The notes beneath the pieces were generated by a model. That model worked only from the letters and a program-made list of their open reading frames with translations. It ran no database searches and was not told the origin of the DNA. Shown piece by piece: positions 1 to 50,656 of a DNA stretch of 64,000 nucleotides. Source of the DNA: Mizuhopecten yessoensis. Taxonomy: Eukaryota. Each line of letters begins with the position of its first letter. Position 1 is the stretch's first letter. The position numbers and the translations under genes were made by a program. The DNA is taken from the NCBI RefSeq assembly GCF_002113885.1, contig NW_018408713.1, positions 2,386,908-2,450,907 of the forward strand. The letters are read 5' to 3'.

Positions 1-199
1 CATCTGACATCTTACACTTACCTACATACAGTCATCTGACATCTTACACTTACCTACATACAGCCATCTGACATCTTACACTTACCTACATACAGCCATC
101 TGACATCTTACACTTACCTACATACAGCCATCTGACATCGTACACTTACCTACATACAGCCATCTGACATCGTACACTTACCAACATACAGCCATCTGA
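1..199. repeat. 32-bp tandem repeat (at least 6 copies, truncated by the window edge) built from the ANAPC4 exon end plus donor
   Basis: Unit catctgacatcttacacttacctacatacagc; the last copy overlaps exon 182-237. Confidence 0.95.
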
Positions 200-237
200 A
201 GAAAGCCTTGAAGTTCTTTATACTGTTATCAATTACT
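182..237 (-). CDS. ANAPC4: ANAPC4 exon (VIDNSIKNFKAFFRWLYV)
   Basis: ttacag acceptor, TTG|gtaagt donor, 56 nt. Confidence 0.95.
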
Positions 238-3200
238 CTGTAATATAAGGAATAAAATTATTCTTAAATTATGATCAACTGTTGTTTGTTTTACAGGTAG
301 ACAATTCATCATTATAGGTCACCAAATCAAACAAGAAAACAACAGGGGCAGGATTATATAATATATTATGCCTATCCAATGCCATGTACAGATTTTGTTG
401 AACTTCTAATTTAGCCTTTCTCTTAGTATATGCTGATGTAACAGACTCACTGCTGTATTTCTGACGTTTTCAGGACAAAAGATCCCACAGCAGTGACAGC
501 CTCCTGGATCTTCTGTGTGTGCATACCGAGGACTCCAAACTTTTCGTACCATGCTGACATCCCCCGTAGGTCACTCAGGTGGTAAAGCATTGCCTGACTC
601 ACCCTGTAAGAGGTGGAATATAATCTAGTTTCTTTATAACTGATAATATTCCTTGTAGTTTAATTTTGCACTTTTCATGGTAGTTAAAATGTGCAAAAGC
701 AACATTTCCCAAAAAAATGTAAAAATCTCAGATTGATAAAGGGCTATATAGACTATAAAATGTCTTGACTCGTGCACTTTACAGAATTTATCAGCCAAAT
801 TAAGGATCCCTGTCCCACTGCACTGGGATTTTTCTTTATACAGTTACCTTCCCTTAACATCTGTTTGGACATCACTGTAGTACAGTTTCGCCAGTACACT
901 GACCAACTAGCTCAATCAGTTAGAGCGATAACATAACAATCTGAGGTCAAGGGTTAAATTCCCTGTCTAGCCCAGCGGTTTGGTTTTTACACTCAAAATA
1001 CTGTTGAATATATTTTGTTTATTTCATCTTTATTATTTCTCATAAAAGTCTCAAAAAGGTATGGTTTTCTTTTCGGAAATGATTTATCAAAGTTATAGCC
1101 ATGCAGGAAAAAACAGTTTCCAACACTTTGTTACAGTTTTTGGCAGTGGTACCAGGATCATTAAGTGTAAAAAATTAATGACAAAATTCTTTTTTTTTTA
1201 AATAATTAAATCCATTATGCCATACAAGTAGTTCTAATAGTAGTTCTGCTATTGTGTAAACATATACATTACAATAAACGGTTTTCATTGATTTACAATG
1301 CACATGTGTGTCATTGTTTTTATTATTTTGTACAGTTTTGAGGAAAATGGAGGAGAAAAAGGATAGTTCCCTATGTTAAAGCAGCCTTGGGTAAAACAGT
1401 CAAGGATATCCTCCAGGGGGGAGATTGATCTGTAGGAAAGATCATATTAGCTCTGAGGTATAACCCAGTTATCTGTTTCTAATCCCATGCTACATTTTTT
1501 TATTAGAAGGAAATTAAAGCATGTTGTAAAAGTGACAACCAGCAAACACAATCATAACAATGTCTCTACAACAAATTTTCATAAACATAAAACCTATTGT
1601 AGTGATACTGAAATTGTTTTTACTATTTTATGTATCAACCACAGTATCTTACTTTGAAAATTGACTGTACAATCAAACCTCAGTATTTATCATTGAGAAG
1701 CCAATAAAGTCAGTTCTTATTGCAGGTTCAGCTTACAGGAAAACAACAGCAATGGAGATTTTTAAAAGTGGTCTCTTAATACAAGTTCAGCTAACAGGAA
1801 ATTAAAGCTATGGAGATTTAAAAAGTGGTTTCTTTATACAAGTTCAGCTAACAGGAAAATAACAGCATTGGAGATTTTTAAAAGTGGTCTCTTAATACAA
1901 GTTCAGCTAACAGGAAAATAACAGCATTGGAGATTTTTAAAAGTGGTCTCTTAATACAGGTTCAGCTAACAGGAAAACAACAGCAATGGAGATTTTAAAA
2001 GTGGTCTCTTAATACAGGTTCAGCTAACAGGAAAACAACAGCAATGGAGATTTTAAAAGTGGTCTCTTAATACAAGTTCAGCTAACAGGAAAATAACAGC
2101 ATTGGAGATTTTTAAAAGTTGTCTCTTAATACAAGTTCAGCTAACAGGAAAATAACAGCAATGGAGATTTTTAAAAGTGGTCTCTTTATACAAGTTCAGT
2201 AAACAGGAAATTAAAGCTATGAAGATTTAAAAAGTGGTTTCTTTATACAAGTTCAGTAAACAGGAAATTAAAGCTATGGAGATTTAAAAAGTGGTTTCTT
2301 AATACAGGTTCAGCTAACAGGAAAAAAACAGCAATTGAGATTTTTAAAAGTGGTCTCTTTATATGGGTGTCTTTTGATAACAGTGGTCTCTGAAATATGA
2401 CAGTACCTACAAATGGTATCTAATTTTTGCTATATACAATAGAGACATTAACTAATTCGCCCCTGAAATTTCATAATGAACTATTCCAACCTCTGAATTG
2501 GAAGAGTTCAAATGAGTCTTCAGGGGTGAATGAGTTGATACGCCTGCCATACTTACACTTGTAGGTGCTGAACCACCAGTTTCTGTATGTTGGAGTAAGA
2601 CGTCTCTATGGAGTGGCCCAGGTTCTTCAGACCCTTAGTAAGTGAAACAATTACTCATTTACTTTTTTATGAAACACTTTGCCAGACTTCTGGGCTACCA
2701 ATCAAGAAAGAGTTCACACTTAAGTCCATTATTAAGTCCAAGTATTTCTTTATTTCTTCTTGGAAAAGCCTTGGTTCTGACCCAAATTCCAATCACTCAT
2801 GTAGAACATACATTTATCACATAACTGACCCATTTTACTATGTCATACGGTCATGTCATAAATATGGTAATACTCACGTGTAATAAAACCTAAAGGTGCT
2901 TCGATTGGTCAAAACCGTGGGAACATATTCCTACGCCACTACAGGTACTACTTTTATTTACTCTACCACATGATATTCCGTCTTTTCGTATTGCAGAGTT
3001 ATCTGCTCTTATCTGAGCAGGTATTGATTGTTTTGTCATTGGTTTGTGAGAGTAACGTCATCAATTTTTGAAAAAACAACGTAATTTTCACACACAAACC
3101 AATGACGTAGCAATCAATACCTGCTCACAAGAGAAGATAACTCTGCAAAATACAAAGACTGAATATTTACTGCTATTTTAAATGAATTTGAAATGTTTAT

Positions 3201-6200
3201 TTCGTCATTATTATAATTATTTTCATCGCATTTAAAACTGTTCATTACTAAACGAAAACCAGAACTACTTTGCACTGCGCAGAATGACAATACTATGATC
3301 GGAGTACTTTGGTTTTGACCTATATTGAGTCAGCTAATATCATATATTTTTTTTAGATTTGTTTCCAAAATATGAATTTAGTGTGAAAAAGACTCTTACA
3401 TTCGTGTCCATGTCATATTGAATTCATTAAATCTGTTCAATAATTTGCTATAAAACTTGCCTAAGGGCTCGTGTCATATCAAATTATTGAACTCGTTTAA
3501 TGAATTCAATATGACATGGACATTCATGTAAGATCCTCAATATCCTACACATGATGGACTTTATTTCAGTATTCTTTCCTACATGTGTGTGTAAATCCAA
3601 GCTATCTCATGTAAGAACACCAAGTTATGGCTTTATCATGACACCGTGCTACAAACATCATATGTCCTTTTAACCTCGCTGCCATCCCTGTGAGTATCAG
3701 ACTTTCTACTCAATATATAGACTATTACATTATCTATTGGAAATGAATGAGACTCTCTTTCATTCATGTATATTGAAGATTGGAAAATTATGAATGGCGA
3801 GTTCTTCCCTCAGAAAGCTTTGAGGTATTGCTCCAACATCTAAATAATTATATCCTTATCACAAACCTTTTCTGTGAGCTCATGGAGTAGGAAAGCTTGA
3901 AGTTCAGGACTGAAAAAAAAAAGGGAAATAAAGTTACTGGTATTTTATAGTTTTGAGAAAGAGTCAGTCTTAAATACTATTTTTTCTTGGAAGTTGTTTT
4001 TTGCCAGCTGGATTTTTTTTTTTTTAAACACAGTGTACCAGGCCCAAGGATCATGAAACAATCTTAAGCCTAAAGTTGACTTCAGTTTGGACTTAGCCAA
4101 TCACAAATAACGTCATGAAAAGTGACGTCATACGTGATAAGCTAAGCAAACATTTAAGTCTAAGATTGTTTCATGATCAAGGGGCCAGGTGTCTTTTAGA
4201 AATTTAGAAATTCAATAACTGAAGTTAGATAAAAAGAATTAACAACTGTCATACATTTCTACCAAAACTTATTCAAACTGTTAACAAAAGAGGCCTCTAT
4301 TTTGTTGTCGACAATTTGCATATGATGTCACCTTGTTTTTCCGTCTTTGCGTATTGCAGAGTTATCTTCTCTTGTTAACAGGTATTGATTGTTACGTCAT
4401 TGGTTTGTGAGAGTAACATCATCAATTGTTGAGAAAACGATGTAATTTTCTCACACAAACCAATGACGTAACAATCAATACCTGCTCACAAGAGAAGATA
4501 ACTCTGCAATACGCAAAGACGGAATAGATGCTCTAATGTGATGTCATATTTGAATGTCATGAGGTCAAAATGCCTGGTCACAACTTCTCCTGATATAGCC
4601 AATGAAATAGCTTCATACATGTGTTCAATGGTTATGCTTATTAACACATGGCCTGAACATGACATGACAAACGCAAATTATCATAGAAAGAATTTTACCG
4701 TACTAAAACACTGTCATCAAAAGTTAGATTACCAGCAGTAAAAAATCCTTGATATTACCGTACAAACACAACCTGTCAGTACCTGGGAGTGCCAAACATT
4801 AACAGCTCCAGGAAGTCATTGCTCACTGTACTGGTGCCAGTCTTCTGACAATACAAAGATGAAATAATGGCATTAAGGAAAATATTTACAGATTACACAC
4901 ACATCAATAAATTTTGAGATTTATTTAAGTTTTCATACATATAGTTACATGATAGTAAGTTCTGGGTCAGTATTGAAAATAGAGATACAAAATGTACAAG
5001 ATTGTAACATCATTACCAGAAATCAAAATCTTACGTTTTTATTATTTACTGAATTAAGTACAGCTTCTGTATTTAAGATATTCTGTATATCAGTTACAGT
5101 GATGATTATCTTCAAATATAAGTTTTTTTGGTGTTTTTTTCATATAATAAAGTCTTTTACAGTTACTGTGAAGCTTTTTTTTGTCATGTTAATGCGTGCA
5201 AGACCGATTGTTGTGATTACCAGGGCAGGTAAGATTTTGTAATAATGGTGCAAGAATTGAATATCTACAATATTCACAGCCGAACATGAAACAGGATTTG
5301 TTGACTTTTTGTCTACGATACACACAACAGAAAAATAGAGGAGGGAGAGCGTACAAGAATGTGGGCATTAGTTAAGTTGAATGAAGTGAAGTAGTTATAT
5401 TGTATTTACCCTTTTTTCTCCAGCAAATTTAAGGAGTTTTGAGTCCATTTCCATGAGGATATCTTCCCACGCCTCGGACATCTGTTGAATGGTCTGCTGT
5501 AGGTACTGTAGAAAATCAAGTTGTAAGTTAAGACCATGCTTAAAAGTGGGTTGTTTGCAGTTTCCCAACCAACTCACGGAAGATGGCACCAACTCAAACT
5601 GTTTTTTGGAACATTTGGTAAACATTTTATTTTGCTGAAAAATCAGTGAAACTTAAGGTTTTCATAAAGATAATTATGAGATTTCTGAAAAAAAATAAAC
5701 TAGATGTATACTTCATGAATACCCCCACTTTGATTGATCAGGAATTGGTGGAAGTGATGGGCATGTGGATTGGAAGAATCAAATGAAGAGTTTATAAGCT
5801 GCAAAAATTTGCACTGAAGGTGGTTTGATACATGATAACGTAGTAATGGTAGAGGTCACAGTGACCTACATATGGTATTCGACACACTGCCTTCCATGCA
5901 TGTACCCACAAACCAAGATTCATAACCATAGGTGAAATAGTACAGGAGATTAGCCCCAGAAACCTTTCTGACGACATTATGTAGGTCAGAGGTCACAGTA
6001 GAGGTCACAGTGACCTACATATGGTACGCAACACACCGCCTTCCATGAATGTACCCACAAACCAAGATTCATAACCGTAGGTGAAATAGTACAGGAGATA
6101 TGCTCCGGAAACCTTTTGGACGGACGGATAGACAAAGCAACCACTATATACCCCCGACTTCGTTGAAGCGGGGGTATAACAAATCTATCTATCCTAAAAT

Positions 6201-9200
6201 GTGATTAGGGAAACTGTAAACAAACAATTTTTTAAAGATGGCCTTAATTTCTATATGGTTTGTTGCAGATATTGTGTGATTTGTTTATGGGTGGCTGCAT
6301 GGCACAATGAAAAGCACCTTCGTCTTTCACCAAGACGGCTGTTTGTTCAATTCGTTGAGCTGGAAAGGGTATCGGGTCACCTGACCGACCAAGTGGGTTT
6401 TCTCTGGGTATTCTGGTTTCCTCCAACATAAAGACCCTCTGCGCTATCATCTGAGCTAACAAGAGTGATTAATATAAGTTGATGAATTTATTTCTTTATT
6501 CTTGTAATATAAATTAAAGGTTGTTTTTTTTGGGGGGGGGGTTGTGGCAGGGCTTAAAACATAGCGTGAGCTTATTTTACAATGAGAAGTACGGAAACAA
6601 AGAACCTACCCCAATTAAAGTGGCTATTTGTCCACACTTCAGAGCCAGGATGCGCAGTTCTTGGTATCGTGATGACAGCAGTCTTGTGTCAAACTGTGGA
6701 AACATGAATAGAGTCAACAAAAGTCTATGGGGTCAGCATTACTCACCATTTCTGCTATCTGAAAACTTAATCGGATGGTGGCCATCTTGGATTTATTATC
6801 GACTTAGCAATTAACAAAACTTTAGCACATGCAATGGGATGGACATTTTGTAGAACTTGTGAATTAACTCAAAATGTCTGAACCAGTCAAGGGTCATGGC
6901 ATGCACATTGAATTATTGAATTGTATACCTGACCTCATGGGCTATACTTTTCTTTTATACAGATTTATATTCACTTGGCTCGCAGTTGATTCATACAAAT
7001 TAAAGTTAAAAGATGTCAAATTAAATCAAAGGAGCAGACTTTCAAAGATTTCCCATTTCACCCCAGGTGCTACCTGACCTTTCCCTACTTACAGTCATGA
7101 TAACCTGACCTTCCCCTACTTAGTCATGATAACCTGACCTTCCCCTACTTACAGTCATGATAACCTGACCTTCCCCTACTTACAGTCATGATAACCTGAC
7201 CTTCCCCTTCTTACAGTCATGATAACCTGACCTTCCCCTACTTACAGTCATGATAACCTGACCTTCCCCTACTTACAGTCATGATAACCTGACCTTCCCC
7301 TACTTACAGTCATGATAACCTGACCTTCCCCTACTTACAGTCATGATAACCTGACCTTCCCCTACTTACAGTCATGATAACCTGACCTTCCCCTACTTAC
7401 AGTCATGATAACCTGACCTTCCCCTACTTACAGTCATGATAACCTGACCTTCCCCTACTTACAGTCATGATAACCTGACCTTCCCCTACTTACAGTCATG
7501 ATAACCTGACCTTCCCCTACTTACAGTCATGATAACCTGACCTTCCCCTACTTACAGTCATGATAACCTGACCTTCCCCTACTTACAGTCATGATAACCT
7601 GACCTTCCCCTACTTACAGTCATGATAACCTGACCTTCCCCTACTTACAGTCATGATAACCTGACCTTCCCCTACTTACAGTCATGATAACCTGACCTTC
7701 CCCTACTTACAGTCATGATAACCTGACCTTCCCCTACTTACAGTCATGATAACCTGACCTTCCCCTACTTACAGTCATGATAACCTGACCTTCCCCTACT
7801 TACAGTCATGATAACCTGACCTTCCCCTACTTACAGTCATGATAACCTGACCTTCCCCTACTTACAGTCATGATAACCTGACCTTCCCCTACTTACAGTC
7901 ATGATAACCTGACCTTCCCCTACTTACAGTCATGATAACCTGACCTTCCCCTACTTACAGTCATGATAACCTGACCTTCCCCTACTTACAGTCATGATAA
8001 CCTGACCTTCCCCTACTTACAGTCATGATAACCTGACCTTCCCCTACTTACAGTCATGATAACCTGACCTTCCCCTACTTACAGTCATGATAACCTGACC
8101 TTCCCCTACTTACAGTCATGATAACCTGACCTTCCCCTACTTACAGTCATGATAACCTGACCTTCCCCTACTTACAGTCATGATAACCTGACCTTCCCCT
8201 ACTTACAGTCATGATAACCTGACCTTCCCCTACTTACAGTCATGATAACCTGACCTTCCCCTACTTACAGTCATGATAACCTGACCTTCCCCTACTTACA
8301 GTCATGATAACCTGACCTTCCCCTACTTACAGTCATGATAACCTGACCTTCCCCTACTTACAGTCATGATAGAGAACTCCTGTTCCTGTGAGTCGTCTTT
8401 TGACAGCTCTATCACCGTGGAAACCAAGTGAAGGTCCTGAGATATCTCAGCACTATGTATTTGTTTCAGCTAGAAGAAATTTAAAAAAAAAAAGTTTTTT
8501 ACACATTTTGTTATTGCATGAAATAATATATTTTGTCAAGTGTATCAGGAAATGTAACAAATTATATTTGTTTAATCACTCAGCTATAATTTTCAGTACC
8601 AGGACTGATTTTCAAGTTGTCAATATATACTCCAGTGACATGAATATGTATTCATCTGGCGAGTGTTGCAGGGGAGACACCTCTTTGACTTTAGTAGACG
8701 TGATATTCTCTTACCCTGGACGGGTGTATCCACAATTTTACAAGGTTGAGACAGGGGGATTCCCCTATTCATAACAATGGTATGACGTCACGTCAACAAT
8801 ACAACGGAGAATTATTCTTATGTTGCCAAACACTTGGCCTAGTCTCGTGTTTGACAACTTAAGAATCTTCCCCTTCAGGTTGAGATTCCCCTATCTCGCA
8901 CCCAAGCGCCCACAATACATTGTGATGTCAAAATACACAACATCAGCCCAGAATGGGAAAATAGTGTCTGGGTAAGGTTTGAAATGAATAAAAGGAGGCA
9001 ACACACATGTATGAGGTATAATATACATTCTTAATATGTAGAATATTCTGGACATCTCAATAAACAAGTATCCTGGTTCCATTGAATAAAGTCAAACTAA
9101 TGAGATATTTTTCTTCGACACTTACCTGTGCATCATGTGCAGGTTTTCTTAGCCACTTACCTGTGCATCATGAGCAGGTGTGACTACTGTGTCACCAATG

Positions 9201-12200
9201 GGATACACACCATATGCAAACATGTGTAACTCCTTCGCACAGCCCGCAAGCAACAGATTCAGTCTAGAAAAAAAATATGGCTGTTTGAAAACAATGTCAG
9301 TTTCCAAAATTCATTCTTTAACTTAGAAACCTCATTAAAAAGACATGTTTTCTAAAACAAGATTTCACAGTATGATGATGAATGTTTTCATCATATTTAA
9401 TGTACTTGTACTTCAGAGAAATCTGTTGAAATACAAGTATATTGAGAAATGTTGATGTTTCAGAGGAAAAGAATATATTGTATTGGACAGCAAATAAGAT
9501 CCCACGCGCAAATAAGCCCCCTCTCCACTTTGGCAATTGTCTTGGACACAGGGTTGGTGCCTGCAATTAAGCCTCCTCCCTAATTTGTCTCTCTCTTAAA
9601 AAATATGTATGTTAATTTTTGTCTCTGAATATAAGCAAATTTACTACCTGGATGTTGGTTGTTATTTTTACAACATGAACTACTGTAAGTACATGATATG
9701 TAGTGTGGTCATAGATAAAAACAGTGGTATATCCAAGATGACAGACATTTGTGAACAGGGGGGAAACCCGCAGTTAAGCCCCCTCCTTACTTTTGGTCAA
9801 TCTGTTTTCACTAGGGGTGGAGGTTTATTTGTGGATAAAATACTGAATCATTCTCATGTGAACCAAAATGAAACCCTTAACACAAGGGTATGAGAAACTG
9901 ATCTGAACCTATCACATCTGTGTGAATCACTGATGAATACATAGAAAGCACACATCTATGTCAAGAGGAATGAAATATGACAAGGAAATCTTAAACAAGG
10001 GGTAGGAGAAAAAGATTCTCACACTCCTGTGTGATGGTCATGTACAAGATGCTGTCAAGGAAGAGAACCTTAATGAATGATGCAGAGAAACTTTAAATTG
10101 CAATTCTTAATTTTTTTGGGTGATGTAAAAAGGTATTTTATTAGTGAATCAAAAACAAAACGTTCAAGTCAAAAAGTGAACAGACATGACATTAAATTTA
10201 ACTAAATTTGGTAATTTTTAAAAATGTTGTATGTCAGAAAATGTTACAATGATAATAAGAATATCATAAGGGTAAGCATTGTATGTAGTTTGAGGTTTGC
10301 TGACATCTACAAATGTTATGTAGCTCTGCATCACCAGTAAAACTCAATTTGTAATTATTTCACAGAATACACCCACATATATCTATATGAATACATAGGG
10401 GAGGGTGGGGGTTATTTGGTGTAAATTGCTTACAATTAATATTCCTAACAAATATGAAATCTGATGACAATAAATTTTCCTGAAAATGGTGTGATCTTAA
10501 TTGTGAGGTATGTAAGGTCACCTGAAAAAAGCGACATTTTCGACATTTTTGGTAACCCATATTTATATATGAAAATTTGCAGGGTTTAAATTTCACAATG
10601 AACTGAAATTTTTTAGGTCAATGTTATAGCAAAACTAACGTATGTAGGAAATGTATGCAGTATACATAACCAATCCCAGTGAGCCTTTATAAACACCTAA
10701 TGGCACAGATATTAGACAGAAAAAAAAACTTTGTTTAGTTTCGCCAAATCTACTTAAAATACTTACTCCTTTTGGTCATTCAGCTTTTTACTATCTTCAA
10801 CATTTTCTTCTCTGAGACAGAAAATACATGTTACAAACAGAAGTGTCCCAAAGACAAACATGTTTATCATTAGACTACATAGGATTGAGCATTTAATTTG
10901 GACAAAATAAGACCAGTCATGAATTTGAGTCCTGGTGAAAACCACGTTAATACAAAAAAGCAAGTTTGCAAAATTAAGTTTCAGTAAAACATGAATCATG
11001 TACCACTAGATGGGCAAATTTACAATAAAACATGGAAATTATGTGTTAAGATATTAATGTCATAGTAAATAAACAGGTAGCTGTGTCATACTTACACAGA
11101 TGCTCCCTTTGATAAAGTTCCATAACTGAAACACAAAATTGTGGATTATGAGATTATCTCCCCTTATCAAAATATTGTCTATTCAATAAGACTTCTTTCA
11201 CTGGGAACAAGTTACCAGCTCATTGATAAGTTGAAAATCATCATCAATATTTTATGATTTAATGATTAATCAAATTTTATTAACGAATACAGTATTTACT
11301 TTAACATTCCATGCCCTAAACAAAAAGATTATGGCGGAAAAAATATTTTGACATTTCTGTTGCCGTAGCCTATCGATAAATCTACAAGCAAAAAAAGGTT
11401 CAATAAACTTATAACAGCAAGAAATATTACACATGAATGTTTTCCAGTCAGCAACAGTACTTCTGTCATTACTGTTAAAGCTATATTGGCACAGGTGTGG
11501 CATGACATCAAATTCAAAATTATGCAGAAATTCCAAAATGGTATTTGAGTGTTTACTATCACCAGATTGTGGTTAGTGCACACTTTCTAGTGTTCTTTCA
11601 AACATGTCAGCAATTCATTTACCAAGTCCAAATTGCTAGGGATGTCACAATAGGCCTGGAGTGTATCACAATATATTGCAATACAGAAAACGATACAAAA
11701 AGCTCTATTGTCAGAAGGGAAAGTCAGGGGGTTTTCTTACAAAGAGCTTAATTTAAACAGTACTAGTAACACCAGTAGCTTGCTTTGTGGCTGTCAGAAC
11801 ATGAGACTGTGTAGTACATATGTAAAAACAAAATTAAAACACCTAAAAGATACAAATAATAAGAATAAAAAAAAAGTAATACGATAATGTGCATATTCCA
11901 ATATACCAGTTTTTCTATATATGTTGGACAGTCCTACAAATCGCTATTCATAAAAGATATTTTACATGTTTATTTGAGCGGAACTCTTTCTGGAAGGAGG
12001 TGTCATAGTTAGACAGCCTTAAACCTTTATCTACCTTTTGTTTAACGGCTGTAATTTTGGAAGGTATAGTGAGGCATTATCATCTTCATACGGGTCTGGG
12101 GACCAGGTGGTTCCCTCCGGCAAAGACTGTGTGATCCAGCTCATACAGGTTACCTCGCCTGGAAGTTCCAACGTTGTGAGGACTTCAGAGTTTTCTATGT

Positions 12201-15200
12201 CATACAGGTTGATCTTGCCACATGTGTATCCAGCTGCTAGCACTGAAATAGAAAAATAGAAGTCATTTCCAACCTAGCTGCGGCCTATGGAGCAGCAAGC
12301 AGTTAACCTTTGTTTTCTATCACCAGTGGCAAGAGGTAACTGAAAGTCGATATCTCCCTCCTTGACTTTTTCAGAAATACTGTGCTGGTACCTATGTATA
12401 CAGCTGGGCAGACACAACAGCAGTAACTACCTCATGCCAGTTCAGTTCAAACTTATGGCTGGATATATGTCTATCCCTCACATCCTGACTGGGATATCAT
12501 GTACTACCGGGTGTTAGATTTGTCTATCCCTCCCTTCCTGACTGGGATATCATGTACTACTACTAGCCGGTGTTAGATTTGTCTATCCCTCCCATCCTGA
12601 CTGGGATATCATGTACTAGCCGGTGTTAGATTCGTCTATCCCTCGCATCCTGACTGGGATATCATGTACTACCCAGTGTTAGATTTGTCTATCCCTCCCA
12701 TCCTGACTGGGATATCATGTACTACCCGGTGTTAGATTTGTCTATCCCTCCCATCCTGACTGGGATATCATGTACTACCCGGTGTTAGATTTGTCTATCC
12801 CTCCCATCCTGACTGGGATATCATGTACTACCCGGTGTTAGATTTGTCTATCCCTCCCATCCTGACTGGGATATCATGTACTACCCGGTGTTAGATTTGT
12901 CTATCCCTCCCATCCTGACTGGGATATCATGTACTACCCGGTGTTAGATTTGTCTATCCCTCCCATCCTGACTGGGATATCATGTACTACCCGGTGTTAG
13001 ATTTGTCTATCCCTCCCATCCTGACTGGGATATCATGTACTACCCGGTGTTAGATTTGTCTATCCCTCCCATCCTGACTGGGATATCATGTACTACCCGG
13101 TGTTAGATTTGTCTATCCCTCCCATCCTGACTGGGATATCATGTACTACCCGGTGTTAGATTTGTCTATCCCTCCCATCCTGACTGGGATATCATGTACT
13201 ACCCGGTGTTAGATTTGTCTATCCCTCCCATCCTGACTGGGATATCATGTACTACCCGGTGTTAGATTTGTCTATCCCTCCCATCCTGACTGGGATATCA
13301 TGTACTACCCGGTGTTAGATTTGTCTATCCCTCCCATCCTGACTGGGATATCATGTACTACCCGGTGTTAGATTTGTCTATCCCTCCCATCCTGACTGGG
13401 ATATCATGTACTACCCGGTGTTAGATTTGTCTATCCCTCCCATCCTGACTGGGATATCATGTACTACCCGGTGTTAGATTTGTCTATCCCTCCCATCCTG
13501 ACTGGGATATCATGTACTACCCGGTGTTAGATTTGTCTATCCCTCCCATCCTGACTGGGATATCATGTACTACCCGGTGTTAGATTTGTCTATCCCTCCC
13601 ATCCTGACTGGGATATCATGTACTACCCGGTGTTAGATTTGTCTATCCCTCCCATCCTGACTGGGATATCATGTACTACCCGGTGTTAGATTTGTCTATC
13701 CCTCCCATCCTGACTGGGATATCATGTACTACCCGGTGTTAGATTTGTCTATCCCTCCCATCCTGACTGGGATATCATGTACTACCCGGTGTTAGATTTG
13801 TCTATCCCTCCCATCCTGACTGGGATATCATGTACTACCCGGTGTTAGATTTGTCTATCCCTCCCATCCTGACTGGGATATCATGTACTACCCGGTGTTA
13901 GATTTGTCTATCCCTCCCATCCTGACTGGGATATCATGTACTACCCGGTGTTAGATTTGTCTATCCCTCCCATCCTGACTGGGATATCATGTACTACCCG
14001 GTGTTAGATTTGTCTATCCCTCCCATCCTGACTGGGATATCATGTACTACCCGGTGTTAGATTTGTCTATCCCTCCCATCCTGACTGGGATATCATGTAC
14101 TACCCGGTGTTAGATTTGTCTATCCCTCCCATCCTGACTGGGATATCATGTACTACCCGGTGTTAGATTTGTCTATCCCTCCCATCCTGACTGGGATATC
14201 ATGTACTACCCGGTGTTAGATTTGTCTATCCCTCCCATCCTGACTGGGATATCATGTACTACCCGGTGTTAGATTTGTCTATCCCTCCCATCCTGACTGG
14301 GATATCATGTACTACCCGGTGTTAGATTTGTCTATCCCTCCCATCCTGACTGGGATATCATGTACTACCCGGTGTTAGATTTGTCTATCCCTCCCATCCT
14401 GACTGGGATATCATGTACTACCCGGTGTTAGATTTGTCTATCCCTCCCATCCTGACTGGGATATCATGTACTACCCGGTGTTAGATTTGTCTATCCCTCC
14501 CATCCTGACTGGGATATCATGTACTACCCGGTGTTAGATTTGTCTATCCCTCCCATCCTGACTGGGATATCATGTACTACCCGGTGTTAGATTTGTCTAT
14601 CCCTCCCATCCTGACTGGGATATCATGTACTACCCGGTGTTAGATTTGTCTATCCCTCCCATCCTGACTGGGATATCATGTACTACCCGGTGTTAGATTT
14701 GTCTATCCCTCCCATCCTGACTGGGATATCATGTAATACCCGGTGTTAGATTTGTCTATCCCTCCCATCCTGACTGGGATATCATGTAATACCCGGTGTT
14801 AGATTTCTCTATACCCATCCTGACTGGGATATCATGTAATACCCAGTGTTAGATTTGTCTATCACTCGCATCCTGACTGGGATATCATGTACTACCTGGT
14901 GTTAGATTTGTCTATCCCTTTCCATCTGTCTTGCACCTTACAAGTTCACACAATGATGTGTTTATCCAAGCACATAAAGTATAACACATATTCCACAATT
15001 CTCCCTATTTCTGAAGTAGACTCCTGATTTGGAAACCTTAAATTCAATATCCCAACCAATGAATTCGCTAAACTATTCCTTTATTCTAAGGTCAAATGAT
15101 TTCATCTGAAAGAGCAATAAGATGCCATTTTAAGTGTTAGGAATATACACACATTTTATTAATGTATAAATTTTGAGCATGTGGAATCTCTGCAAAGGAA

Positions 15201-18200
15201 ATGTTAAAAGGTTGGCAAATACGATAACAGCCATAATTTTAAATGTTCCATTTTGATCTTAAATGTATGGTGTTGATGTTATTAAATTTTCGATATTAAA
15301 TACAATATATACTACATACATGAAAATTTGTCTTGCAATGTACCCTTTCCCTTTAATGCACCGCGTAATGATGGTGAAATTATCAACATAGCAATCAAAT
15401 ATGAAGGGCGGAATTAACACTGGCCAAATATGGTGTTACTAGCCAAAGGTGAATGATACAGACATTTCACCTACCCAATGAAACCTGCTTTTGTTCTCTC
15501 GTAAGACTTATATTATTTATGTGAAAGCATTCGAACGTAGATATAGTAGTGCAGAGGCTGTGTTAAACTGGGGTCTAAGATGGATTACATGTTAATTTGG
15601 AAATGGCAGAATCAGAGAAACTGTATATAAAGACGGAATCATCCCAGTGATGTTGCTAGGTTTGGGATTGTTAACAGATGAAGCATTTGGTTCTGTTTGG
15701 AATTTTACCTTTCCCATCTGGTCGCCATGCCAACGCTGTAACCTTGACCTCTTCAGCAGGTGGCGCCACCAACCAGACTTTCTGCCATGACAGTCGATGT
15801 AGGACAACCTGTTAATGACAGACAAAAAACTGCTTATGTAAACTTGCTTATTATACATAAACAAAACTCTCAAGTAGGGTCAACAAGGTTTTAACAAACA
15901 TTTTTTCACAAAAATGCTCTCTTAATCACAAATTGGATACATATTGCAGATATTAAATGTGACAATTAACTATTTCACTAATTTACAAAAGCCACTACAA
16001 AAATGTATACCATGTATTTATTACTTTACCATCCTTTAAAAAAAAGATTATTGAGCACACATGTATTACCTCTTCATTCTTTGTCACAAAATACATATAT
16101 AGACCTGTGCGATGGCGCAGGTCGAGCAGACCTCGCTGGTAGGGGGACCCCCAACCCTTGGAAAGCTTGACTTACGGCATTGCACAATCATTTCAAAATG
16201 TATTTTTTCATGCCTTTCTATAAACAGTAATGCAAAGATCTGTCAGTATATTTATTTTGTTTTATTTTGATATCTTTGAAAATAACTATGTAACAATATT
16301 TTATAGTTTGCTACTTTAAGAAGCTGTCTGCCACTATATTTTTTTTTATTATATATGTTGTATTGTTTTCTATATAAATGGAAATACAATTTTACCAATC
16401 AATTATCTAATATGATACAAACATATCCTATTCTGTGCTATCTGAACCGTTACCGGATTGATTTTCTTATTTTTTCTTACTTTTCTTCCATTTTTAAAGG
16501 ACCCCATTGGAAATCAGCCACTTTGTGGCTTTTATGGGTAATCCTAGGTAAACGGCACTCACCACCACTCCTATTATGCAACCTATTTATATCTACCTTC
16601 ATATACTAAAAATAGTCTGTATTATTTTATAGTAATATCTGCCTTTTTTTATAGTGTATCAGATTTTTTTTAGATTTTTATACTCTGGGATATACGTCAA
16701 GGTGAATTAAGAAACCTTTTATTATGATAGACCTATTATTATTCTCAGTCTTAATTAATACAAAATACTCTTTTTTATTTACAAGCTGATTGTGATCTTA
16801 ATTACAAAATGTATATGTTTTATTCTAAATTGTGATATCTTGTAATAACATGCCTATTTTAACTGAATAAATATTATTATAATTCTGATATCTGTGTTGC
16901 CAGTCGCGGACCAAGGGGTGTTGCCAGTGGCGGACCCAGGGGTGTTGCCCTAGTTGTGTGGGCAACACCCTTTTTTCTATGTCCAAAAATAATCTGGACC
17001 AAGGTTTTTGAAGATTTCCCTCTATTTCATATGGGATTTCCTTCTAATATCAACCATCCTTTGAACTATGATTTGCTATGACTTCCCCAGCCAGTAGTTT
17101 GAATATTTTGGGGGTTAAGAAATACACACCTAATGTAATGATGTATCAAGAATTAGGGAGGCTACCTTTACAAATGATTAGGAAATTTAGAATTTTTAAA
17201 TATTGGCTTAAACTTAAAATTTCGGACAATTGCATTTTAAAGGCTTGTTACAATGAGATGATTGAAAAGGTCAGCGACTGGACAAATAGCATAACAAATA
17301 AATTATATAGGTTAGGTTTGGGATATTTATGGCTAACAGAGGATAATGAAGGTCAAATTCTGAATATTATTAAATGTAGAATGCATGACATTTTTCAACA
17401 GGAGTGTCTAGATTTAATTAATTCATCTGCTAAGTGTTCTCTTTATAAATGGATCTGTGGTATTTTTTGTCTTAAACAGTATTTAATTAAACCTATTGGA
17501 TTACAAAATATAAAACAAATTGCTAAAATTTGGTTGTCATCGCATACGTTGAATATTGAAACGGGTAGATTTCATGGTTTAGAGAGAAAAGATAGAATTT
17601 GTATATATTGTAACACTGGCGATATTGAAGACGAATATCATTATAGTATTAGATGTAGTCATTATACTGATTAAAGAAACCATTTCGTTAAAAAATATTA
17701 TCATAAAAAACCTAGTATGGCAAATTTTTTAGATTTGATGACAACCAGAAATAATAAAGAACTTTCTAATTTAGTCAAATATCTGAACCAATGTCAAAAA
17801 AGGAGATGCAATACTGTTTAGGATTGAAGGAATCACTCTCTATACTTTCTGTGATTTTATCGTGTATGCATGGTCGGAAGGTGGTATTCTCTGTATTCTC
17901 ATATATATATACTGTATAATTTGAACTGTATATATGCACTGTACTGATGAACCGCAAGGTTTAAGGTAATAAAGAATGAATGAATGAACATCTATATATG
18001 TCTAAGGGTGTTGCCGAAACAAGGAGTCCACTACTTATACTCTAAACAATCGGGGATTAATCCTCTATTGTCTATATATAAGTTGGGTCTCCAGTCAGGT
18101 CAGTGATCAAGGCTCACCGGACTGACTCTACCTAATCTTATTGTTCTAATGTCACAGTGTGGTGATCCCCCTGTCAGTTGGCGAGGAATATACCATCTGT

Positions 18201-19688
18201 TGGGATTAGGTATTATAGGTGGAAATGATATTTCAAAGGTTGAGTCCATTTCATGATAGATAAACCTGTATTTTCACATGTGGTTTCATGTTCACATGAT
18301 CACCAGGAGTGATTTATTAAAGCAATTAAAAAATATTCCAAAAATTTCAAAGACAATAAAGCACCCTCCTTAGCATCACTTTATCAGGTGAATAATAACC
18401 AATGTTAGCATAAAAGCCTAGCATGGTTATCCTTTTCATTAGGTGTTGCCCTTGTACATATGTATGCATACAAATTCTCAATAAAAGACAAACAATTAAA
18501 TCATAATTCATACTTATGACCAAAAAATAATAATATTTAATTGCCAAAATGCTCCCCTAAACTACATGCACATAAAGGGCATGACACAAACCAAACATCA
18601 ACATTTTAACCAAAAACCTACATTTTTACCATTTTTCATAGAATTTACCTTGCTGCATCCAATTCTTTCATCTATCCAGTTTTTAACATTTGACTTTTAT
18701 CCCTTTATCCTTTTTCAGCAGTGTTATTATGTTTCAAAATTCAAGTTTTATTTATTCACTCCAACACACTTACGTGTGTAACAAGAGGTCACATACATAT
18801 AGTAAATATGATACATGGCGTGTGATGTACACAATTACAACATTGTATATAGCATAGTTACATATAGAAGGAGCATAACCTTGTACAGAAATTCAGTTAA
18901 TATCTGTTCAAGCTTTTCTAGGAATCTACAAACTTTTGTGTAAATTTTTACATTAAATATATTAAACAATCCTTGCATTTTTATTTGACTTGGATAAGTG
19001 AAATAGTATTTTGGTATATATTTCTCTCTTAGACATTTAACTAAATCACTTTCACATATAAATAAGTAATGAAATTCATCCCCAATGTCGGAATTACGTT
19101 ATGTGTGCATGGAGGTTTCGAAAAGAACATGGGTCTTTCAGAAAAGAGGATCATTAAGCTAGGACAAGGAACACATATGGCATACCAACTTGGTACCATT
19201 TGCAACCCTCTGTTCACCACACTCTGGACAAAGCAATTAAAACATTGGACACTTGCGTCCCCCTAAACACTGAACACCACTCACACAATACCCCCGTATA
19301 CACCCACCCCACCCTGAAAACGAAAAACATACGACACCACTTACTTCCCTTGAACATTTGACACTACAATGCCCCTTTTGCAAATCCCGTTCATCTGTTT
19401 TTAAATGTAACATTTTCGGTTATAAATCATGGCGGCCCTGAAAGACCTTGCAAGGCTTTATCAAGGCTTGCCTGAAAGCAGCACAAGATTACTAGACCAG
19501 ACCTTATTTCATAAACCAACAACTCTGGTCCAACTGGTTCAACCTCCAGCCTCCAGCCAGACACTACTTACCTCCCCTTGAACATTAGACAGAGCCACCA
19601 GGTCAAACTTGGGTGACCATAACATCAACTCCACCTCCACAGACACATGCTTCTCGTCCACCTGTTTAAATGCTGTCTCCTCTGGCAT
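182..19688 (-). CDS. ANAPC4: Anaphase-promoting complex subunit 4 (5' part; 14 coding exons, continues beyond the left edge)
   Basis: Join of 19688-19572, 15808-15709, 12242-12035, 11125-11096, 10811-10767, 9263-9161, 8469-8362, 6693-6610, 5505-5410, 4844-4783, 3909-3867, 2633-2557, 603-451, 237-182. All introns are GT-AG with consistent phases. The translation has recognisable APC4 motifs: WSPKFDLVAL, LHRLSWQKVW, LAWRPDGK, EAWEDILMEMDSKL, GLKNLGHSIETSYSNIQKLV, NFKAFFRWLYV. Confidence 0.95.
451..603 (-). CDS. ANAPC4: ANAPC4 exon (VSQAMLYHLSDLRGMSAWYEKFGVLG...)
   Basis: ttacag acceptor, CA|gtgagt donor, 153 nt. Confidence 0.93.
800..1164. mobile_element. TTAA-flanked MITE (Kolobok/piggyBac-like) carrying a tRNA-like segment
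   Basis: ttaaggatccctgtcccactgc ... gcagtggtaccaggatcattaa; homologous to 60528-61132 in the opposite orientation. Confidence 0.6.
1725..2362. repeat. ~58-bp tandem repeat (about 11 copies), probably inside a Tc1/pogo-type MITE
   Basis: Unit caagttcagctaacaggaaaataacagcattggagatttttaaaagtggtctcttaata; preceded by tacaatcaaacctc at 1668. Confidence 0.85.
2449..2539. mobile_element. Short TTAA-type palindromic MITE
   Basis: ttaactaattcgcccctgaa ... ttcaggggtgaatgagttga imperfect TIRs. Confidence 0.5.
2557..2633 (-). CDS. ANAPC4: ANAPC4 exon (GLKNLGHSIETSYSNIQKLVVQHLQ)
   Basis: AAG-type acceptor (cttactaag), GT|gtaagt donor, 77 nt. Confidence 0.92.
2974..3165. mobile_element. ~190-bp long-TIR MITE family A, copy 1
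   Basis: tattccgtctt...aagac(t/g)gaata with ~70-bp TIRs; homologous copies at 4339 and 53670. Confidence 0.85.
3394..3533. mobile_element. Palindromic MITE
   Basis: tcttaca..tgtccatgtcatattgaattcattaaa / tttaatgaattcaatatgacatggaca..tgtaaga inverted arms. Confidence 0.75.
3867..3909 (-). CDS. ANAPC4: ANAPC4 exon (SPELQAFLLHELTEK)
   Basis: tttcag acceptor, AAG|gtttgt donor, 43 nt. Confidence 0.92.
4042..4185. mobile_element. PIF/Harbinger-like MITE
   Basis: TIRs gccc..gatcatgaaacaatctta / taagattgtttcatgatc..gggc, flanked by a 3-bp CAG duplication. Confidence 0.65.
4339..4526. mobile_element. MITE family A, copy 2
   Basis: Highly similar to 53670-53859. Confidence 0.85.
4783..4844 (-). CDS. 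ANAPC4: ANAPC4 exon (KTGTSTVSNDFLELLMFGTP)
   Basis: gtcag acceptor, AG|gtactg donor, 62 nt. Confidence 0.9.
5410..5505 (-). CDS. ANAPC4: ANAPC4 exon (YLQQTIQQMSEAWEDILMEMDSKLLKFAGEKR)
   Basis: Highly conserved APC4 helix; ctacag acceptor, AGG|gtaaat donor. Confidence 0.95.
5698..6180. mobile_element. Non-autonomous Helentron/DINE-like element
   Basis: aactag end, ~150-bp internal direct repeat, (ggac)n microsatellite and terminal hairpin tatacccccg..cgggggtata. Confidence 0.65.
6291..6485 (+). mobile_element. tRNA-derived SINE with a V-domain-like core
   Basis: Degenerate A/B boxes followed by gtgggttttctctgggtattctggtttcctcc. Confidence 0.55.
6610..6693 (-). CDS. ANAPC4: ANAPC4 exon (FDTRLLSSRYQEL...IATLIG)
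   Basis: ccacag acceptor, GGG|gtaggt donor, 84 nt. Confidence 0.9.
7072..8371. repeat. 31-bp minisatellite (about 42 near-identical copies) built from the ANAPC4 exon end plus donor
   Basis: Unit cctgaccttcccctacttacagtcatgataa; on the minus strand TTATCATGACT|gtaagtaggggaaggtcagg. Confidence 0.97.
8362..8469 (-). CDS. ANAPC4: ANAPC4 exon (LKQIHSAEISQDL...FSIMT)
   Basis: ttctag acceptor, ACT|gtaagt donor, 108 nt, phase 0-0. Confidence 0.88.
9161..9263 (-). CDS. ANAPC4: ANAPC4 exon (LNLLLAG...FAYGVYPIG...HDAQ)
   Basis: ttctag acceptor, CAG|gtaagt donor, 103 nt. Confidence 0.9.
10767..10811 (-). CDS. ANAPC4: ANAPC4 exon (EENVEDSKKLNDQK)
   Basis: ctcag acceptor, GA|gtaagt donor, 45 nt. Confidence 0.88.
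11096..11125 (-). CDS. ANAPC4: ANAPC4 30-nt exon (SYGTLSKGASV)
   Basis: tgtttcag acceptor, GT|gtaagt donor; phase 2-2 bridges its neighbours. Confidence 0.8.
12035..12242 (-). CDS. ANAPC4: ANAPC4 exon (VLAAGY...LPKLQPLNK)
   Basis: Matches ORF 12031..12243; tttcag acceptor, AG|gtagat donor. Confidence 0.92.
12468..14918. repeat. 53-bp intronic minisatellite (about 46 copies)
   Basis: Unit ccggtgttagatttgtctatccctcccatcctgactgggatatcatgtactac; homogeneous core with degenerate edges. Confidence 0.97.
15709..15808 (-). CDS. ANAPC4: ANAPC4 exon (VVLHRLSWQKVW...WRPDGK)
   Basis: cag acceptor, G|gtaaaa donor, 100 nt; WD40-region motif. Confidence 0.93.
17095..17988 (+). mobile_element. 5'-truncated non-LTR retrotransposon (CR1/L2-type 3' end)
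   Basis: ORF with ELGRLPL, LSSHTLNIETGR and RICIYC..DIEDEYH; AATAAA plus (GAAT)n tail. Confidence 0.85.
19572..19688 (-). CDS. ANAPC4: ANAPC4 first coding exon (MPEETAFKQ...NVQGE)
   Basis: ATG at 19688; acceptor upstream with exon starting at 19708; donor GAG|gtaagt; 39 codons. Confidence 0.92.
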
Positions 19689-49983: not shown

Positions 49984-50656
49984 CATTCTCGTTACCCTAG
50001 GGGTTACGCTCACTTTCGCTCTCTACACCCCTGGAATCATCCTCGATACCCCAGGGGTTACGCTCACTTTCGATCTCTGCACCCCTGGCATATGTCATAA
50101 CAAAATTGAATTCTCACTGTGTACCACTTTGTGGATGAGGCGAGAAGACTAGTTCGATCCTTTGATGTACATCAAAAGAATCTCGCTGTCGCGTAACGGT
50201 AAAAAAAATTGGCGTTGAAGTTGGGTATCGCTCCTTTGTAATCTTCAAAGGACAAGTATCAGCCTAGTGATTGGTCAGGTTATTGTATCCGACACCAATT
50301 AAATTGATAGCCATGTGCCTTCAATTTTGCTATGACATCTTCCAGGGGTGCAGAGAGAGAAAGTGAGCGTAACCCCTGGAGATCGAGGATGATTCCAGGG
50401 GTACCGAGAGAGAAAGCGAGCGTAACCCCTGGATATCGCGGATGATTCCAGGGGTAAAGAGAGAGAAAGTGAGCGTACCCCCTGGATATCGAGGATGATT
50501 CAAGGGGCACAGAGAGAGAAAGTGAGCGAAACCCCTGGATATCGAGGATGACTCCAGGGGTACAGAGAGAGAAAGTTAGCGTAACCCCTGGATATCGCGG
50601 ATGATTCCAGGGGTACAGAGAGAGAAAGTGAGCGTAACCCCTGGATACCGAGGATG
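49984..50656. mobile_element. MITE family B, copy 1, with a tandemly amplified 53-bp TIR unit
   Basis: Two units on the left and six inverted units on the right (50341-50656); core homologous to 56620-56972. Confidence 0.85.

What the first reader, a model, noticed from the sequence alone, without database searches (positions are those of the whole stretch)
1..19591. Recurrent copying of 'exon end + 5' splice site' into ANAPC4 introns (4 of 14 donors)
Seen in the sequence: four unrelated ANAPC4 donors are copied downstream into their own intron together with the last ~10-20 nt of the exon. They are exon 182-237 (32-bp array, at least 6 copies), exon 8362-8469 (31-bp array, ~42 copies), exon 9161-9263 (one copy 35 nt away) and exon 19572-19688 (one degenerate copy ~230 nt away). 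The units share no sequence other than GTAAGT. I noticed no equivalent copying of acceptors. Inference: a process biased to 5' splice sites seeds these duplications, or selection keeps them as U1-binding arrays (decoy donors, telescripting, or NMD-coupled dosage control). The four cases look like different stages of one process.
Basis: partly seen in the sequence, partly recalled or inferred. Interest (0 to 1): 0.8.

Follow-up and report, generated by a model that had tools for sequence, protein, structure and literature searches.

The report
Splice-donor minisatellites in scallop-like ANAPC4
Four 5' splice sites of one ANAPC4 gene are really re-copied into their own introns, three of them as tandem arrays, but this is a known kind of exon/intron-boundary minisatellite in a genome that is about one fifth tandem repeats, and I found no good evidence that the copies have a function.

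Summary
ANAPC4 lies on the minus strand, and four of nine verified donors are copied downstream with 10-18 nt of exon tail. They are a 32-bp array (1-199, cut by an assembly gap), a 31-bp x42 array (7072-8371), a 35-bp pair (9109-9179) and a degenerate copy about 230 nt from exon 1. None of nine acceptors is copied.

The same structure occurs elsewhere in this genome. There is a probable fifth array further down the same gene. There are also a PP2C-type exon on another scaffold and a monocarboxylate-transporter exon in an unbiased 200-kb sample.

The kind is known: 'mirage' minisatellites in amphioxus, and the human F7, CBS, IFI6, LMNB2 and PDGF intron arrays. About 19% of the sampled DNA is minisatellite.

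The cluster within this gene exceeds uniform expectation (0.08 expected, 3 seen). My genome-wide tests for donor enrichment were only suggestive. First readers of this scan noted the same thing on other pieces of this genome, including arrays built from acceptors (unchecked).

Best reading: tolerated by-products of rampant minisatellite formation. The first donor stays in use, and later copies would give premature stops. A donor-directed process or selected U1-binding arrays are not excluded. The sequence is not human.

The parts
1..199 (-). 32-bp minisatellite, at least 6.2 copies. Unit = 17 nt of exon tail (CAGATGGCTGTATGT[T/A]G) + GTAAGTGTA[C/A]GATGT. It is cut at window base 1 by an assembly gap.
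   Evidence: TRF; sequence; unit list; N run in L001 7462-10000
182..237 (-). ANAPC4 exon (56 nt) ending ...FFRWLYV with donor TTG|GTAAGT. It is the first unit of the 32-bp array.
   Evidence: PF12896 positions 176-194, E 0.0034; acceptor and donor scores
7072..8371 (-). 31-bp minisatellite, 42 copies. Unit = 10 nt of exon tail (TATCATGACT) + GTAAGTAGGGGAAGGTCAGGT. 37 identical units lie next to the exon; variants occur only in the last five units.
   Evidence: TRF; sequence; unit tally; 40 ungapped junction hits
8362..8469 (-). ANAPC4 exon (108 nt, phase 0 at both ends) with donor ACT|GTAAGT. Exon status rests on the open frame, the splice signals and phase continuity with neighbouring exons. 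No Pfam or PDB hit of its own.
   Evidence: no hit
9109..9179 (-). 35-bp direct duplication (2 copies, 91%). It holds 18 nt of exon tail + GTAAGTG.C.AAGAAAA. The second donor is 35 nt downstream of the first.
   Evidence: TRF; sequence
9161..9263 (-). ANAPC4 exon (103 nt) with donor CAG|GTAAGT. Its phase fits the neighbouring exons.
19572..19688 (-). ANAPC4 exon 1 from the ATG (19688), with donor GAG|GTAAGT.
19333..19361 (-). Degenerate copy of the exon 1 tail plus donor (TCAAATGTTCAAGGG-AA|GTAAGTGGTGTC), 228 nt downstream of the original.
   Evidence: local score 21 against shuffle maximum 14; D2
19265..19284 (-). Third, weaker copy of the intron head only (GTGAGTGGTGTTCAGTGTTT), 60 nt past the second copy.
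   Evidence: D3 (75% over 20 nt); weak

Best explanation
These are boundary-spanning ('mirage'-type) minisatellites. Each began as an ordinary tandem duplication, by slippage or unequal exchange, whose unit happened to straddle an ANAPC4 exon/intron junction. The exon tail and its GTAAGT donor are therefore repeated into the intron.

The events are independent and of different ages. They arise because this scallop-like genome makes minisatellites at a very high rate: about 19% of sampled bases lie in arrays.

They persist because they cost little. The exon-proximal donor remains the one used, as was shown experimentally for identical tandem donors in human F7. All later copies lie within the intron and are spliced out. 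Any use of a later copy would give a frameshift or an early stop.

Shown here: the structures, their independence, the density of arrays, and the stops. Inferred: which donor is used, near-neutrality, and the mode of origin.
For: Structures.

ANAPC4 identity and the coding nature of the copied tails.

The same architecture in unrelated genes:
- L004: a 32-bp array built from the last 26 nt of a PP2C-domain exon plus GTAAGT.
- L019: a 47-bp x2.6 array built from the last 32 nt of a monocarboxylate-transporter exon (PDB MCT1, E 6e-4).
- Probable cases at L021, L012 and L001.

Array load: 42 arrays covering 19.2% of 195.7 kb, matching the published 21.7% tandem repeats in a scallop genome (PMC10225492).

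Boundary position: the junction falls anywhere within the unit, with exon tails of 5-32 nt. That is what random duplications would give.

Stops:
- In the 32-mer, an in-frame TAG ends the first extra unit.
- In the 35-mer, a TAA falls at the fourth extra codon.
- In the 31-mer, one extra unit gives a +1 frameshift and a TAG falls in the second unit (translations).

No consistent extra conservation of the donor motif in copies.

Precedent:
- In F7 IVS7 only the most upstream of identical donors is used. That paper also lists CBS, IFI6, LMNB2 and PDGF (PMC1557585).
- Amphioxus mirages do not disturb splicing (PMC3087553, PMC3902484).
Against: - Three tandem arrays on 14 donors far exceed the 0.08 expected from uniform placement. 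A purely uniform birth-and-tolerance model does not explain that.
- Several other first-stage notes report two or three such arrays per window (unchecked).
- All four copied donors are GTAAGT (4 of 5 such donors, against 0 of 4 others; p=0.048).
- AGGTAAGT was the commonest of the four 8-mers tested in periodic triplets.
- No RNA data show which donor is used.
Confidence: 0.6

Rival explanations
1. Mutational hotspot. Strong 5' splice sites, or the DNA under them, are preferred seeds for tandem duplication, for example through polymerase pausing, R-loops or replication conflicts coupled to splicing. Arrays are therefore born there more often than elsewhere.
For: - Local excess in ANAPC4: 3 tandem arrays against 0.08 expected.
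- 4/9 donors against 0/9 acceptors copied.
- Only GTAAGT donors are affected.
- Periodic AGGTAAGT gave 4937 matches against 769-2905 for control words. The acceptor-like word gave only 1805 against 1163.
- About 9% of all AGGTAAGT in the genome lies in periodic triplets, against 2% for its reversed word.
Against: - Breakpoints are not stereotyped relative to the GT; the exon tail is 13-81% of the unit.
- Control words vary four-fold. By rough array count over the same contig range, the donor word is only about 2x one control.
- The unbiased sample gives one verified case, which is compatible with chance.
- Acceptor arrays are reported in this genome (unchecked) and in amphioxus (PMC3087553).
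- The mechanism is speculative.
Confidence: 0.2
2. Selected function. The arrays are kept because many U1-binding sites behind an exon help it, or because they regulate dosage. The help could be exon definition of small exons, or protection of long AT-rich introns from premature cleavage and polyadenylation. Dosage control would work through unproductive splicing to PTC-containing isoforms.
For: - All copies are in the sense orientation and keep a strong GTAAGT.
- Two affected exons are small: 56 nt, and a probable 36-nt exon in L001.
- Every downstream donor would give a premature stop, as an NMD switch needs.
- Donor positions are somewhat better kept than the rest of the unit in the 20-mer array, 0.918 against 0.836.
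Against: - No such excess in the PP2C array (0.920 against 0.912), where +3A is the least conserved hexamer position.
- Copy numbers range from 2 to 42 with no common design.
- Most arrays in this genome have no donor motif.
- Premature stops are also what any non-coding insertion gives.
- In the one tested human case the downstream copies are simply silent (PMC1557585).
- No expression data.
Confidence: 0.15
3. Assembly artefact. Some or all of the array length comes from short-read assembly looping through a short duplication.
For: - 37 consecutive identical 31-bp units.
- The 32-bp array ends in a gap.
- Unplaced contigs C65860 (622 bp) and C55901 carry the same unit, C65860 with more variation.
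Against: - Units with private variants sit in ordered positions in both arrays.
- The 35-bp pair and the dispersed copy cannot be loops.
- The same architecture recurs in many places, and is documented by cloning in other animals (PMC3087553).
- At most the copy numbers are wrong, not the existence of the arrays.
Confidence: 0.05

Closest known systems
'Mirage' minisatellites of amphioxus. Adh3: Canestro et al. 2002, cited in PMC3087553. Globins BflGb6 and BflGb9: PMC3087553. Troponin C and PGBD5: PMC3902484.
   Same: Tandem repeats whose unit spans an exon/intron boundary, so that a splice site is reiterated inside the intron. Units are of tens of bases (10-72 bp in Adh3). They recur in several genes of one invertebrate genome, and there are reported not to disturb splicing.
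   Different: The amphioxus cases include both 5' and 3' boundaries, and some have long units (150-160 bp). Here there are four or five donor cases and no acceptor case in one gene, in a mollusc-like genome. Instability and normal splicing were shown there and are untested here.
Human intron minisatellites whose first monomer spans the donor: F7 IVS7 (37 bp, 5-9 copies), IFI6/6-16, CBS IVS13, LMNB2 and PDGF (as named in PMC1557585).
   Same: The authentic donor is followed by identical pseudo-donors in tandem. In F7 only the most upstream site is used, and the next copy is activated only if the first is mutated.
   Different: Those are single loci in different genes of a repeat-poor genome. 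Here there are several per gene, against a background of about 19% minisatellite DNA. Two human cases (IFI6, CBS) do use the first two pseudo-sites; usage here is unknown.
Intron gain by tandem duplication of an AGGT-containing segment (for example the potato RdRp case, PMC4974935).
   Same: A tandem duplication creates an extra splice site next to an existing coding sequence.
   Different: In that model the duplication lies within an exon and creates a new intron. Here the intron already exists and is only lengthened. I have no evidence of a new or shifted intron.

Membership tests
Boundary-spanning ('mirage' / F7-IVS7-type) minisatellite | Head-to-tail tandem array of a unit of about 10-200 bp | tested here: met
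   TRF: periods 32, 31 and 35; 6.2, 42 and 2 copies; 98, 99 and 91% matches
Boundary-spanning ('mirage' / F7-IVS7-type) minisatellite | The first unit contains the end of a real exon and the start of its intron, so the splice site is reiterated in the intron | tested here: met
   Exon tails read in frame. The ANAPC4 profile continues into the 182-237 exon. Junction probes recur only downstream of their own donor.
Boundary-spanning ('mirage' / F7-IVS7-type) minisatellite | The authentic (outermost) site is the one used; copies are silent or minor | not testable with these tools
   No transcript data. Only shown: any downstream donor would introduce a stop or a frameshift.
Boundary-spanning ('mirage' / F7-IVS7-type) minisatellite | Copy-number instability or polymorphism | tested here: inconclusive
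   Unplaced contigs C65860 and C55901 carry the same 31-bp unit, C65860 at 93-95% identity. They could be the other allele or assembly debris.
Introner-like or transposon-borne intron sequence | The same unit dispersed at many loci | tested here: not met
   A search of the whole genome with the 31-bp array found only itself, two small unplaced contigs and two arrays at 70-78% identity. Their unit-level similarity (scores 12.5-16) is what a genome-wide screen of about 1e5 arrays gives by chance. One of them derives from a different gene's own exon. Only the 31-bp unit was searched.
Recursive splice site array (polypyrimidine-YAG|GTAAGT) | A 3' splice site with a pyrimidine tract juxtaposed to the 5' splice site in each unit | tested here: not met
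   Units read ...GGCTGTATGTAG|GT...TATCATGACT|GT and ...CATGATGCACAG|GT. None has a pyrimidine tract.

The most novel reading that the evidence does not exclude
In scallop genomes, exon/intron junctions, and consensus GTAAGT donors above all, are preferential birthplaces of minisatellites. The rate would be ten-fold or more above that of other intronic sequence. That would point either to a splicing- or transcription-coupled mutational process acting on DNA, or to arrays retained as U1-recruiting elements. ANAPC4, with four or five hits, would be a showcase.
Probability: 0.2. Interest if true: 0.7.

Novelty: new member of a known kind. Interest (0 to 1): 0.35.

Why it matters
As it stands, this is a clear and unusually dense example of a known oddity, in a phylum where I found no description of it. 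Searches found only amphioxus and human cases.

It matters practically. Arrays of perfect pseudo-donors behind real exons will mislead gene predictors and break short-read assemblies of bivalve genomes.

It would matter more if a proper annotation-wide count showed that splice junctions seed tandem repeats far above chance. That would link splicing or transcription to a specific form of genome instability. It would also give a natural series, from 2 to more than 40 identical donors, for testing how the spliceosome picks one 5' splice site.

Tried and rejected
1. PWM scan of the units of all arrays in the sample for donor motifs, against shuffles and a reversed matrix. There was no overall excess: 6 against 4 at score >=8, and 3 arrays at p<=0.05 against 2.1 expected. 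Most arrays have nothing to do with donors.

2. Stop-free runs abutting arrays as a proxy for exons. This was useless: 50 donor-side against 53 acceptor-side runs of >=35 codons.

3. A symmetric 'complete exon' screen (acceptor + open frame + donor) on both sides of every array. It gave 2 donor-type and 1 acceptor-type hit at score >=18, against 0.6 and 0.4 expected. This is not significant, and it misses cases with weak acceptors.

4. Pfam on 20 flank frames. Only the PP2C exon scored. Pfam or PDB on the L021, L012 and L001 frames and on exon 8362-8469 gave no hits. Those exons rest on splice signals only.

5. Periodic-word counts genome-wide. The donor word was highest, but controls ranged from 769 to 2905 and large arrays dominate the counts. 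One control word is itself partly donor-like (GTGAG).

6. The idea that the 31-mer belongs to a dispersed satellite family with the 29-bp satellite on C2059 and the PP2C array. I rejected it as chance-level similarity.

7. Per-position conservation of donors within copies. The first two versions were confounded by alignment edge effects. Only the wrap-around version is used.

8. A larger genome sample. I did not try to read more sequence by other routes.

All protein searches were exon by exon, by reference.

10. The big protein searches were not used, because the protein's identity was not in doubt.
Full report
**What the window is.** The window is G000:C5386:2386908-2450907 of a 988-Mb assembly in 82,659 pieces. 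It is AT-rich (32-43% G+C) and carries an intron-rich ANAPC4 gene on the minus strand. It is not human. From memory, the size and piece count fit the published Yesso scallop assembly. A paper gives 724-988 Mb as the range of four pectinid genomes (PMC12121003). I did not test the species.

**Identity of the gene.**
- Pfam ANAPC4_WD40 matches 15710-15820(-) and Pfam ANAPC4 matches 441-602(-) in a six-frame search of the genome.
- Taken one exon at a time, the frames at 15674-15811, 12034-12273, 5398-5652, 2556-2654, 450-659 and 183-257 hit successive stretches of the two profiles.
All searches were exon by exon, by reference.
- From open frames, splice-signal scores and phase continuity I accept nine exons in the window. 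Their donors are:
  - 19572 GAG|GTAAGT
  - 15709 AAG|GTAAAA
  - 12035 AAG|GTAGAT
  - 9161 CAG|GTAAGT
  - 8362 ACT|GTAAGT
  - 5410 AGG|GTAAAT
  - 2557 AGT|GTAAGT
  - 451 GCA|GTGAGT
  - 182 TTG|GTAAGT
- Exons 8362-8469 and 9161-9263 have no Pfam or PDB hit of their own.

- TRF finds a 32-bp array at 1-199, a 31-bp array of 42 copies at 7072-8371 and a 35-bp pair at 9109-9179.
- On the sense strand each array starts inside an exon. The exon tail is 17, 10 and 18 nt, followed by GTAAGT and 9-15 further intron bases.
- The tail copied by the 32-mer encodes the conserved ...RWLYV end of the ANAPC4 domain. The direction of copying is therefore exon to intron.
- The exon 1 junction recurs once, with an indel, 228 nt downstream. 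A faint third copy of the intron head follows 60 nt later.
- A symmetric screen with 36-nt probes centred on every verified junction found downstream copies for four of nine donors (scores 21-32, shuffle maxima 14-15). It found none for nine acceptors. An ungapped version gave 1, 40 and 5 hits for three donors and none elsewhere.

**It goes beyond the window.**
- Downstream in the same gene, at L001 4901-5519(-), a 20-bp array of about 30 copies (CCA|GTAAGTTGTAAAGTTTG) begins at what looks like a 36-nt exon. A pyrimidine tract and AG precede it, one frame is open, and it ends ...AAAATTTGCCA|GTAAGT. I could not confirm that exon by homology.
- A search of the genome with the 31-bp array turned up a 32-bp array on another scaffold. 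Its unit is the last 26 nt of a PP2C-domain exon plus GTAAGT (..PFQLAVVPQSQEGQVLSD; PF00481, E 2e-4).
- The resemblance of that unit, and of a 10.5-kb 29-bp satellite on C2059, to the ANAPC4 31-mer is at the level expected when about 1e5 arrays are screened. I treat these arrays as unrelated in origin.

**An unbiased sample.** I drew 20 stretches of 10 kb at fixed steps along C5386.
- The sample holds 42 arrays (period 12-200, 2.5 copies or more) covering 19.2% of its bases. This agrees with the 21.7% tandem repeats published for a scallop genome (PMC10225492).
- One array is a verified donor array. L019 6146-6267(-), 47 bp x2.6, is built from the last 32 nt of the first coding exon of a monocarboxylate transporter plus GTAGGA (PDB MCT1, E 6e-4, residues 14-68).
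- Two more are probable on splice signals and open frame alone: L021 1616-1760 (CTCAG|GTAAAT, 39 bp) and L012 about 5200-4500(-) (CTTCAG|GTAACC).
- I saw no acceptor-type array in the sample.

**How far this exceeds chance.**
- At the measured density (2.9e-4 array ends per nt), 14 donors with a 20-nt capture zone should carry 0.08 arrays. Three were seen, P about 8e-5. That figure must be discounted for the hundreds of genes this scan has looked at.
- In the unbiased sample 0.4-1.2 donor arrays are expected, depending on exon density. One verified case is compatible with chance. Three would not be.
- Genome-wide, three copies of AGGTAAGT spaced 10-40 nt apart occur 4937 times. The reversed word gives 769, and a second composition-matched word and its reverse give 2123 and 2905.
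- Single-copy counts are 53,822 for AGGTAAGT against 37,095 for the reversed word.
- An acceptor-like word gave 1805 against 1163.
- The donor word is the highest of the four. But the controls scatter four-fold, big arrays dominate the counts, and one control is itself donor-like. This test is therefore suggestive only.
- A matrix scan of all array units showed no general excess of donor motifs. Donor arrays are a small minority of arrays.

**What other readers of this scan noted.** Searching the scan's notes for this genome returned at least seven other first-stage notes of arrays built from an exon end plus its donor. Several report two or three arrays per window. It also returned at least seven notes of arrays built from an acceptor plus an exon start. 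I could not check any of them. If they hold, the phenomenon is common in this genome and is not confined to donors.

**Anatomy and what it says about mechanism.**
- The junction sits at no fixed place in the unit. The exon tail is 17/32, 10/31, 18/35, 11/20, 26/32, 32/47 and about 5/39 nt of the unit. That is what duplications with random end points would give, and not what a break at the splice site would give.
- The two-copy 35-mer shows no flanking microhomology.
- Neighbouring units share variants, and the far end of the 31-mer array is the most diverged. Both are typical of arrays that grow and homogenise locally.
- Using a later donor would be unproductive:
  - In the 32-mer, an in-frame TAG ends the first extra unit.
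  - In the 35-mer, a TAA falls four codons into the extra sequence.
  - In the 31-mer, one extra unit gives a +1 frameshift and a TAG falls in the second unit.
- In a wrap-around alignment, donor positions in the copies are no better conserved than the rest in the PP2C array (0.920 against 0.912). They are only modestly better conserved in the 20-mer (0.918 against 0.836). Earlier versions of this test were confounded by edge effects.
- All four copied donors are GTAAGT: four of five such donors, none of four others (p=0.048). This is a small sample.

**What is known.** Minisatellites whose first monomer spans a donor are documented in the human F7, IFI6, CBS, LMNB2 and PDGF genes. In F7, a 50-construct study showed that only the most upstream of identical donors is used, and that the next copy takes over only when the first is destroyed (PMC1557585). 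In amphioxus the same structures, named 'mirages', occur in Adh3, globin, troponin C and PGBD5 genes, at both 5' and 3' boundaries, without disturbing splicing. They were proposed as a route to new introns (PMC3087553; PMC3902484). I found no description for molluscs. The original amphioxus paper is not held in the library.

**Verdict.**
Copy numbers are uncertain: one array abuts a gap, one is suspiciously uniform, and unplaced contigs carry the same unit.
- They are new members of a known kind.
- The most likely account (0.6) is that they are tolerated by-products of a genome that makes minisatellites everywhere.
- A donor-biased mutational process (0.2) or selected U1-binding or decoy arrays (0.15) remain possible. 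The local excess and the GTAAGT association favour them somewhat. An annotation-wide count and transcript data would decide.

Noticed in passing
L001 4901-5519 (G000:C5386:2381808-2382426), minus strand: A 20-bp array of about 30 copies (CCA|GTAAGTTGTAAAGTTTG, about 80% identity). It starts at a putative 36-nt exon further down the ANAPC4 gene. It is a probable fifth donor array in the same gene, but the exon is not confirmed by homology.
   Followed up: partly
L004 2593-4062 (G000:C1192:848593-850062), plus strand: A PP2C-domain exon ends ...GTCAGGTTCTCAGTGACAG|GTAAGT. It is followed by about 30 copies of a 32-bp unit made of its own last 26 nt plus the donor. Higher-order 78-110-bp units copy still more of the exon. 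A second, diverged block lies at 3879-4062.
   Followed up: yes
L019 6146-6267; L021 1616-1760; L012 about 4500-5200 (systematic sample of C5386): One verified donor-junction array (monocarboxylate-transporter exon 1) and two probable ones, in 200 kb taken without regard to content. The L021 unit is 39 bp and open in frame, so a later donor there would add 13 residues rather than a stop.
   Followed up: partly
L007-L026 (20 x 10 kb of C5386): 19.2% of the non-N bases lie in 42 minisatellite arrays (period 12-200). Several are 3-6 kb long: L020 (24 bp x255), L017 (38 bp x118), L024 (40 bp x106) and L018 (32 bp x98).
   Followed up: partly
window 12468-14919 and 1715-2363: Two further large arrays inside ANAPC4 introns: 53 bp x46 at 98% identity, and 59 bp x11. 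Neither touches an exon boundary.
   Followed up: partly
window 49984-50088 and 50340-50656: The same 53/54-bp unit appears as two arrays in opposite orientation, about 250 nt apart. This inverted arrangement suggests a mobile element.
   Followed up: no
L002 1336-10000 and L003 1-926 (G000:C2059:1133335-1142925): A satellite of at least 9.6 kb with a 29-bp unit (AGGTAGGGGACATGTATTGTATCATGACT). It shares TATCATGACT and GTAGGGGA with the ANAPC4 31-mer. I judged the similarity to be chance-level. No exon is seen at its upstream end.
   Followed up: partly
L006 4682-4953, L008 3332-3632, L010 9525-9988, L015 3673-4993, L025 6241-7490: Arrays with units of about 143-160 bp. At least two of them (L006 and L010) read through the same short peptide motif (..PLLKNTCPD..). 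They look like one dispersed family, perhaps carried by a mobile element.
   Followed up: no
L012 1798-3983, minus strand: Reverse-transcriptase-like open frames (LINE-type by eye) in the intron just behind the L012 donor array.
   Followed up: no
L001 7462-10000, directly upstream of window base 1: A run of about 2.5 kb of N abuts the 32-bp array. Exons of ANAPC4 between ...RWLYV and the next recognisable frame fall inside it. It was left as it is.
   Followed up: no
window 8348 and every 31 nt downstream: Each 31-bp unit holds a second donor-like site, AAG|GTCAGG, and a G run. By a generic matrix this site scores higher (8.5) than the authentic ACT|GTAAGT (6.0).
   Followed up: no
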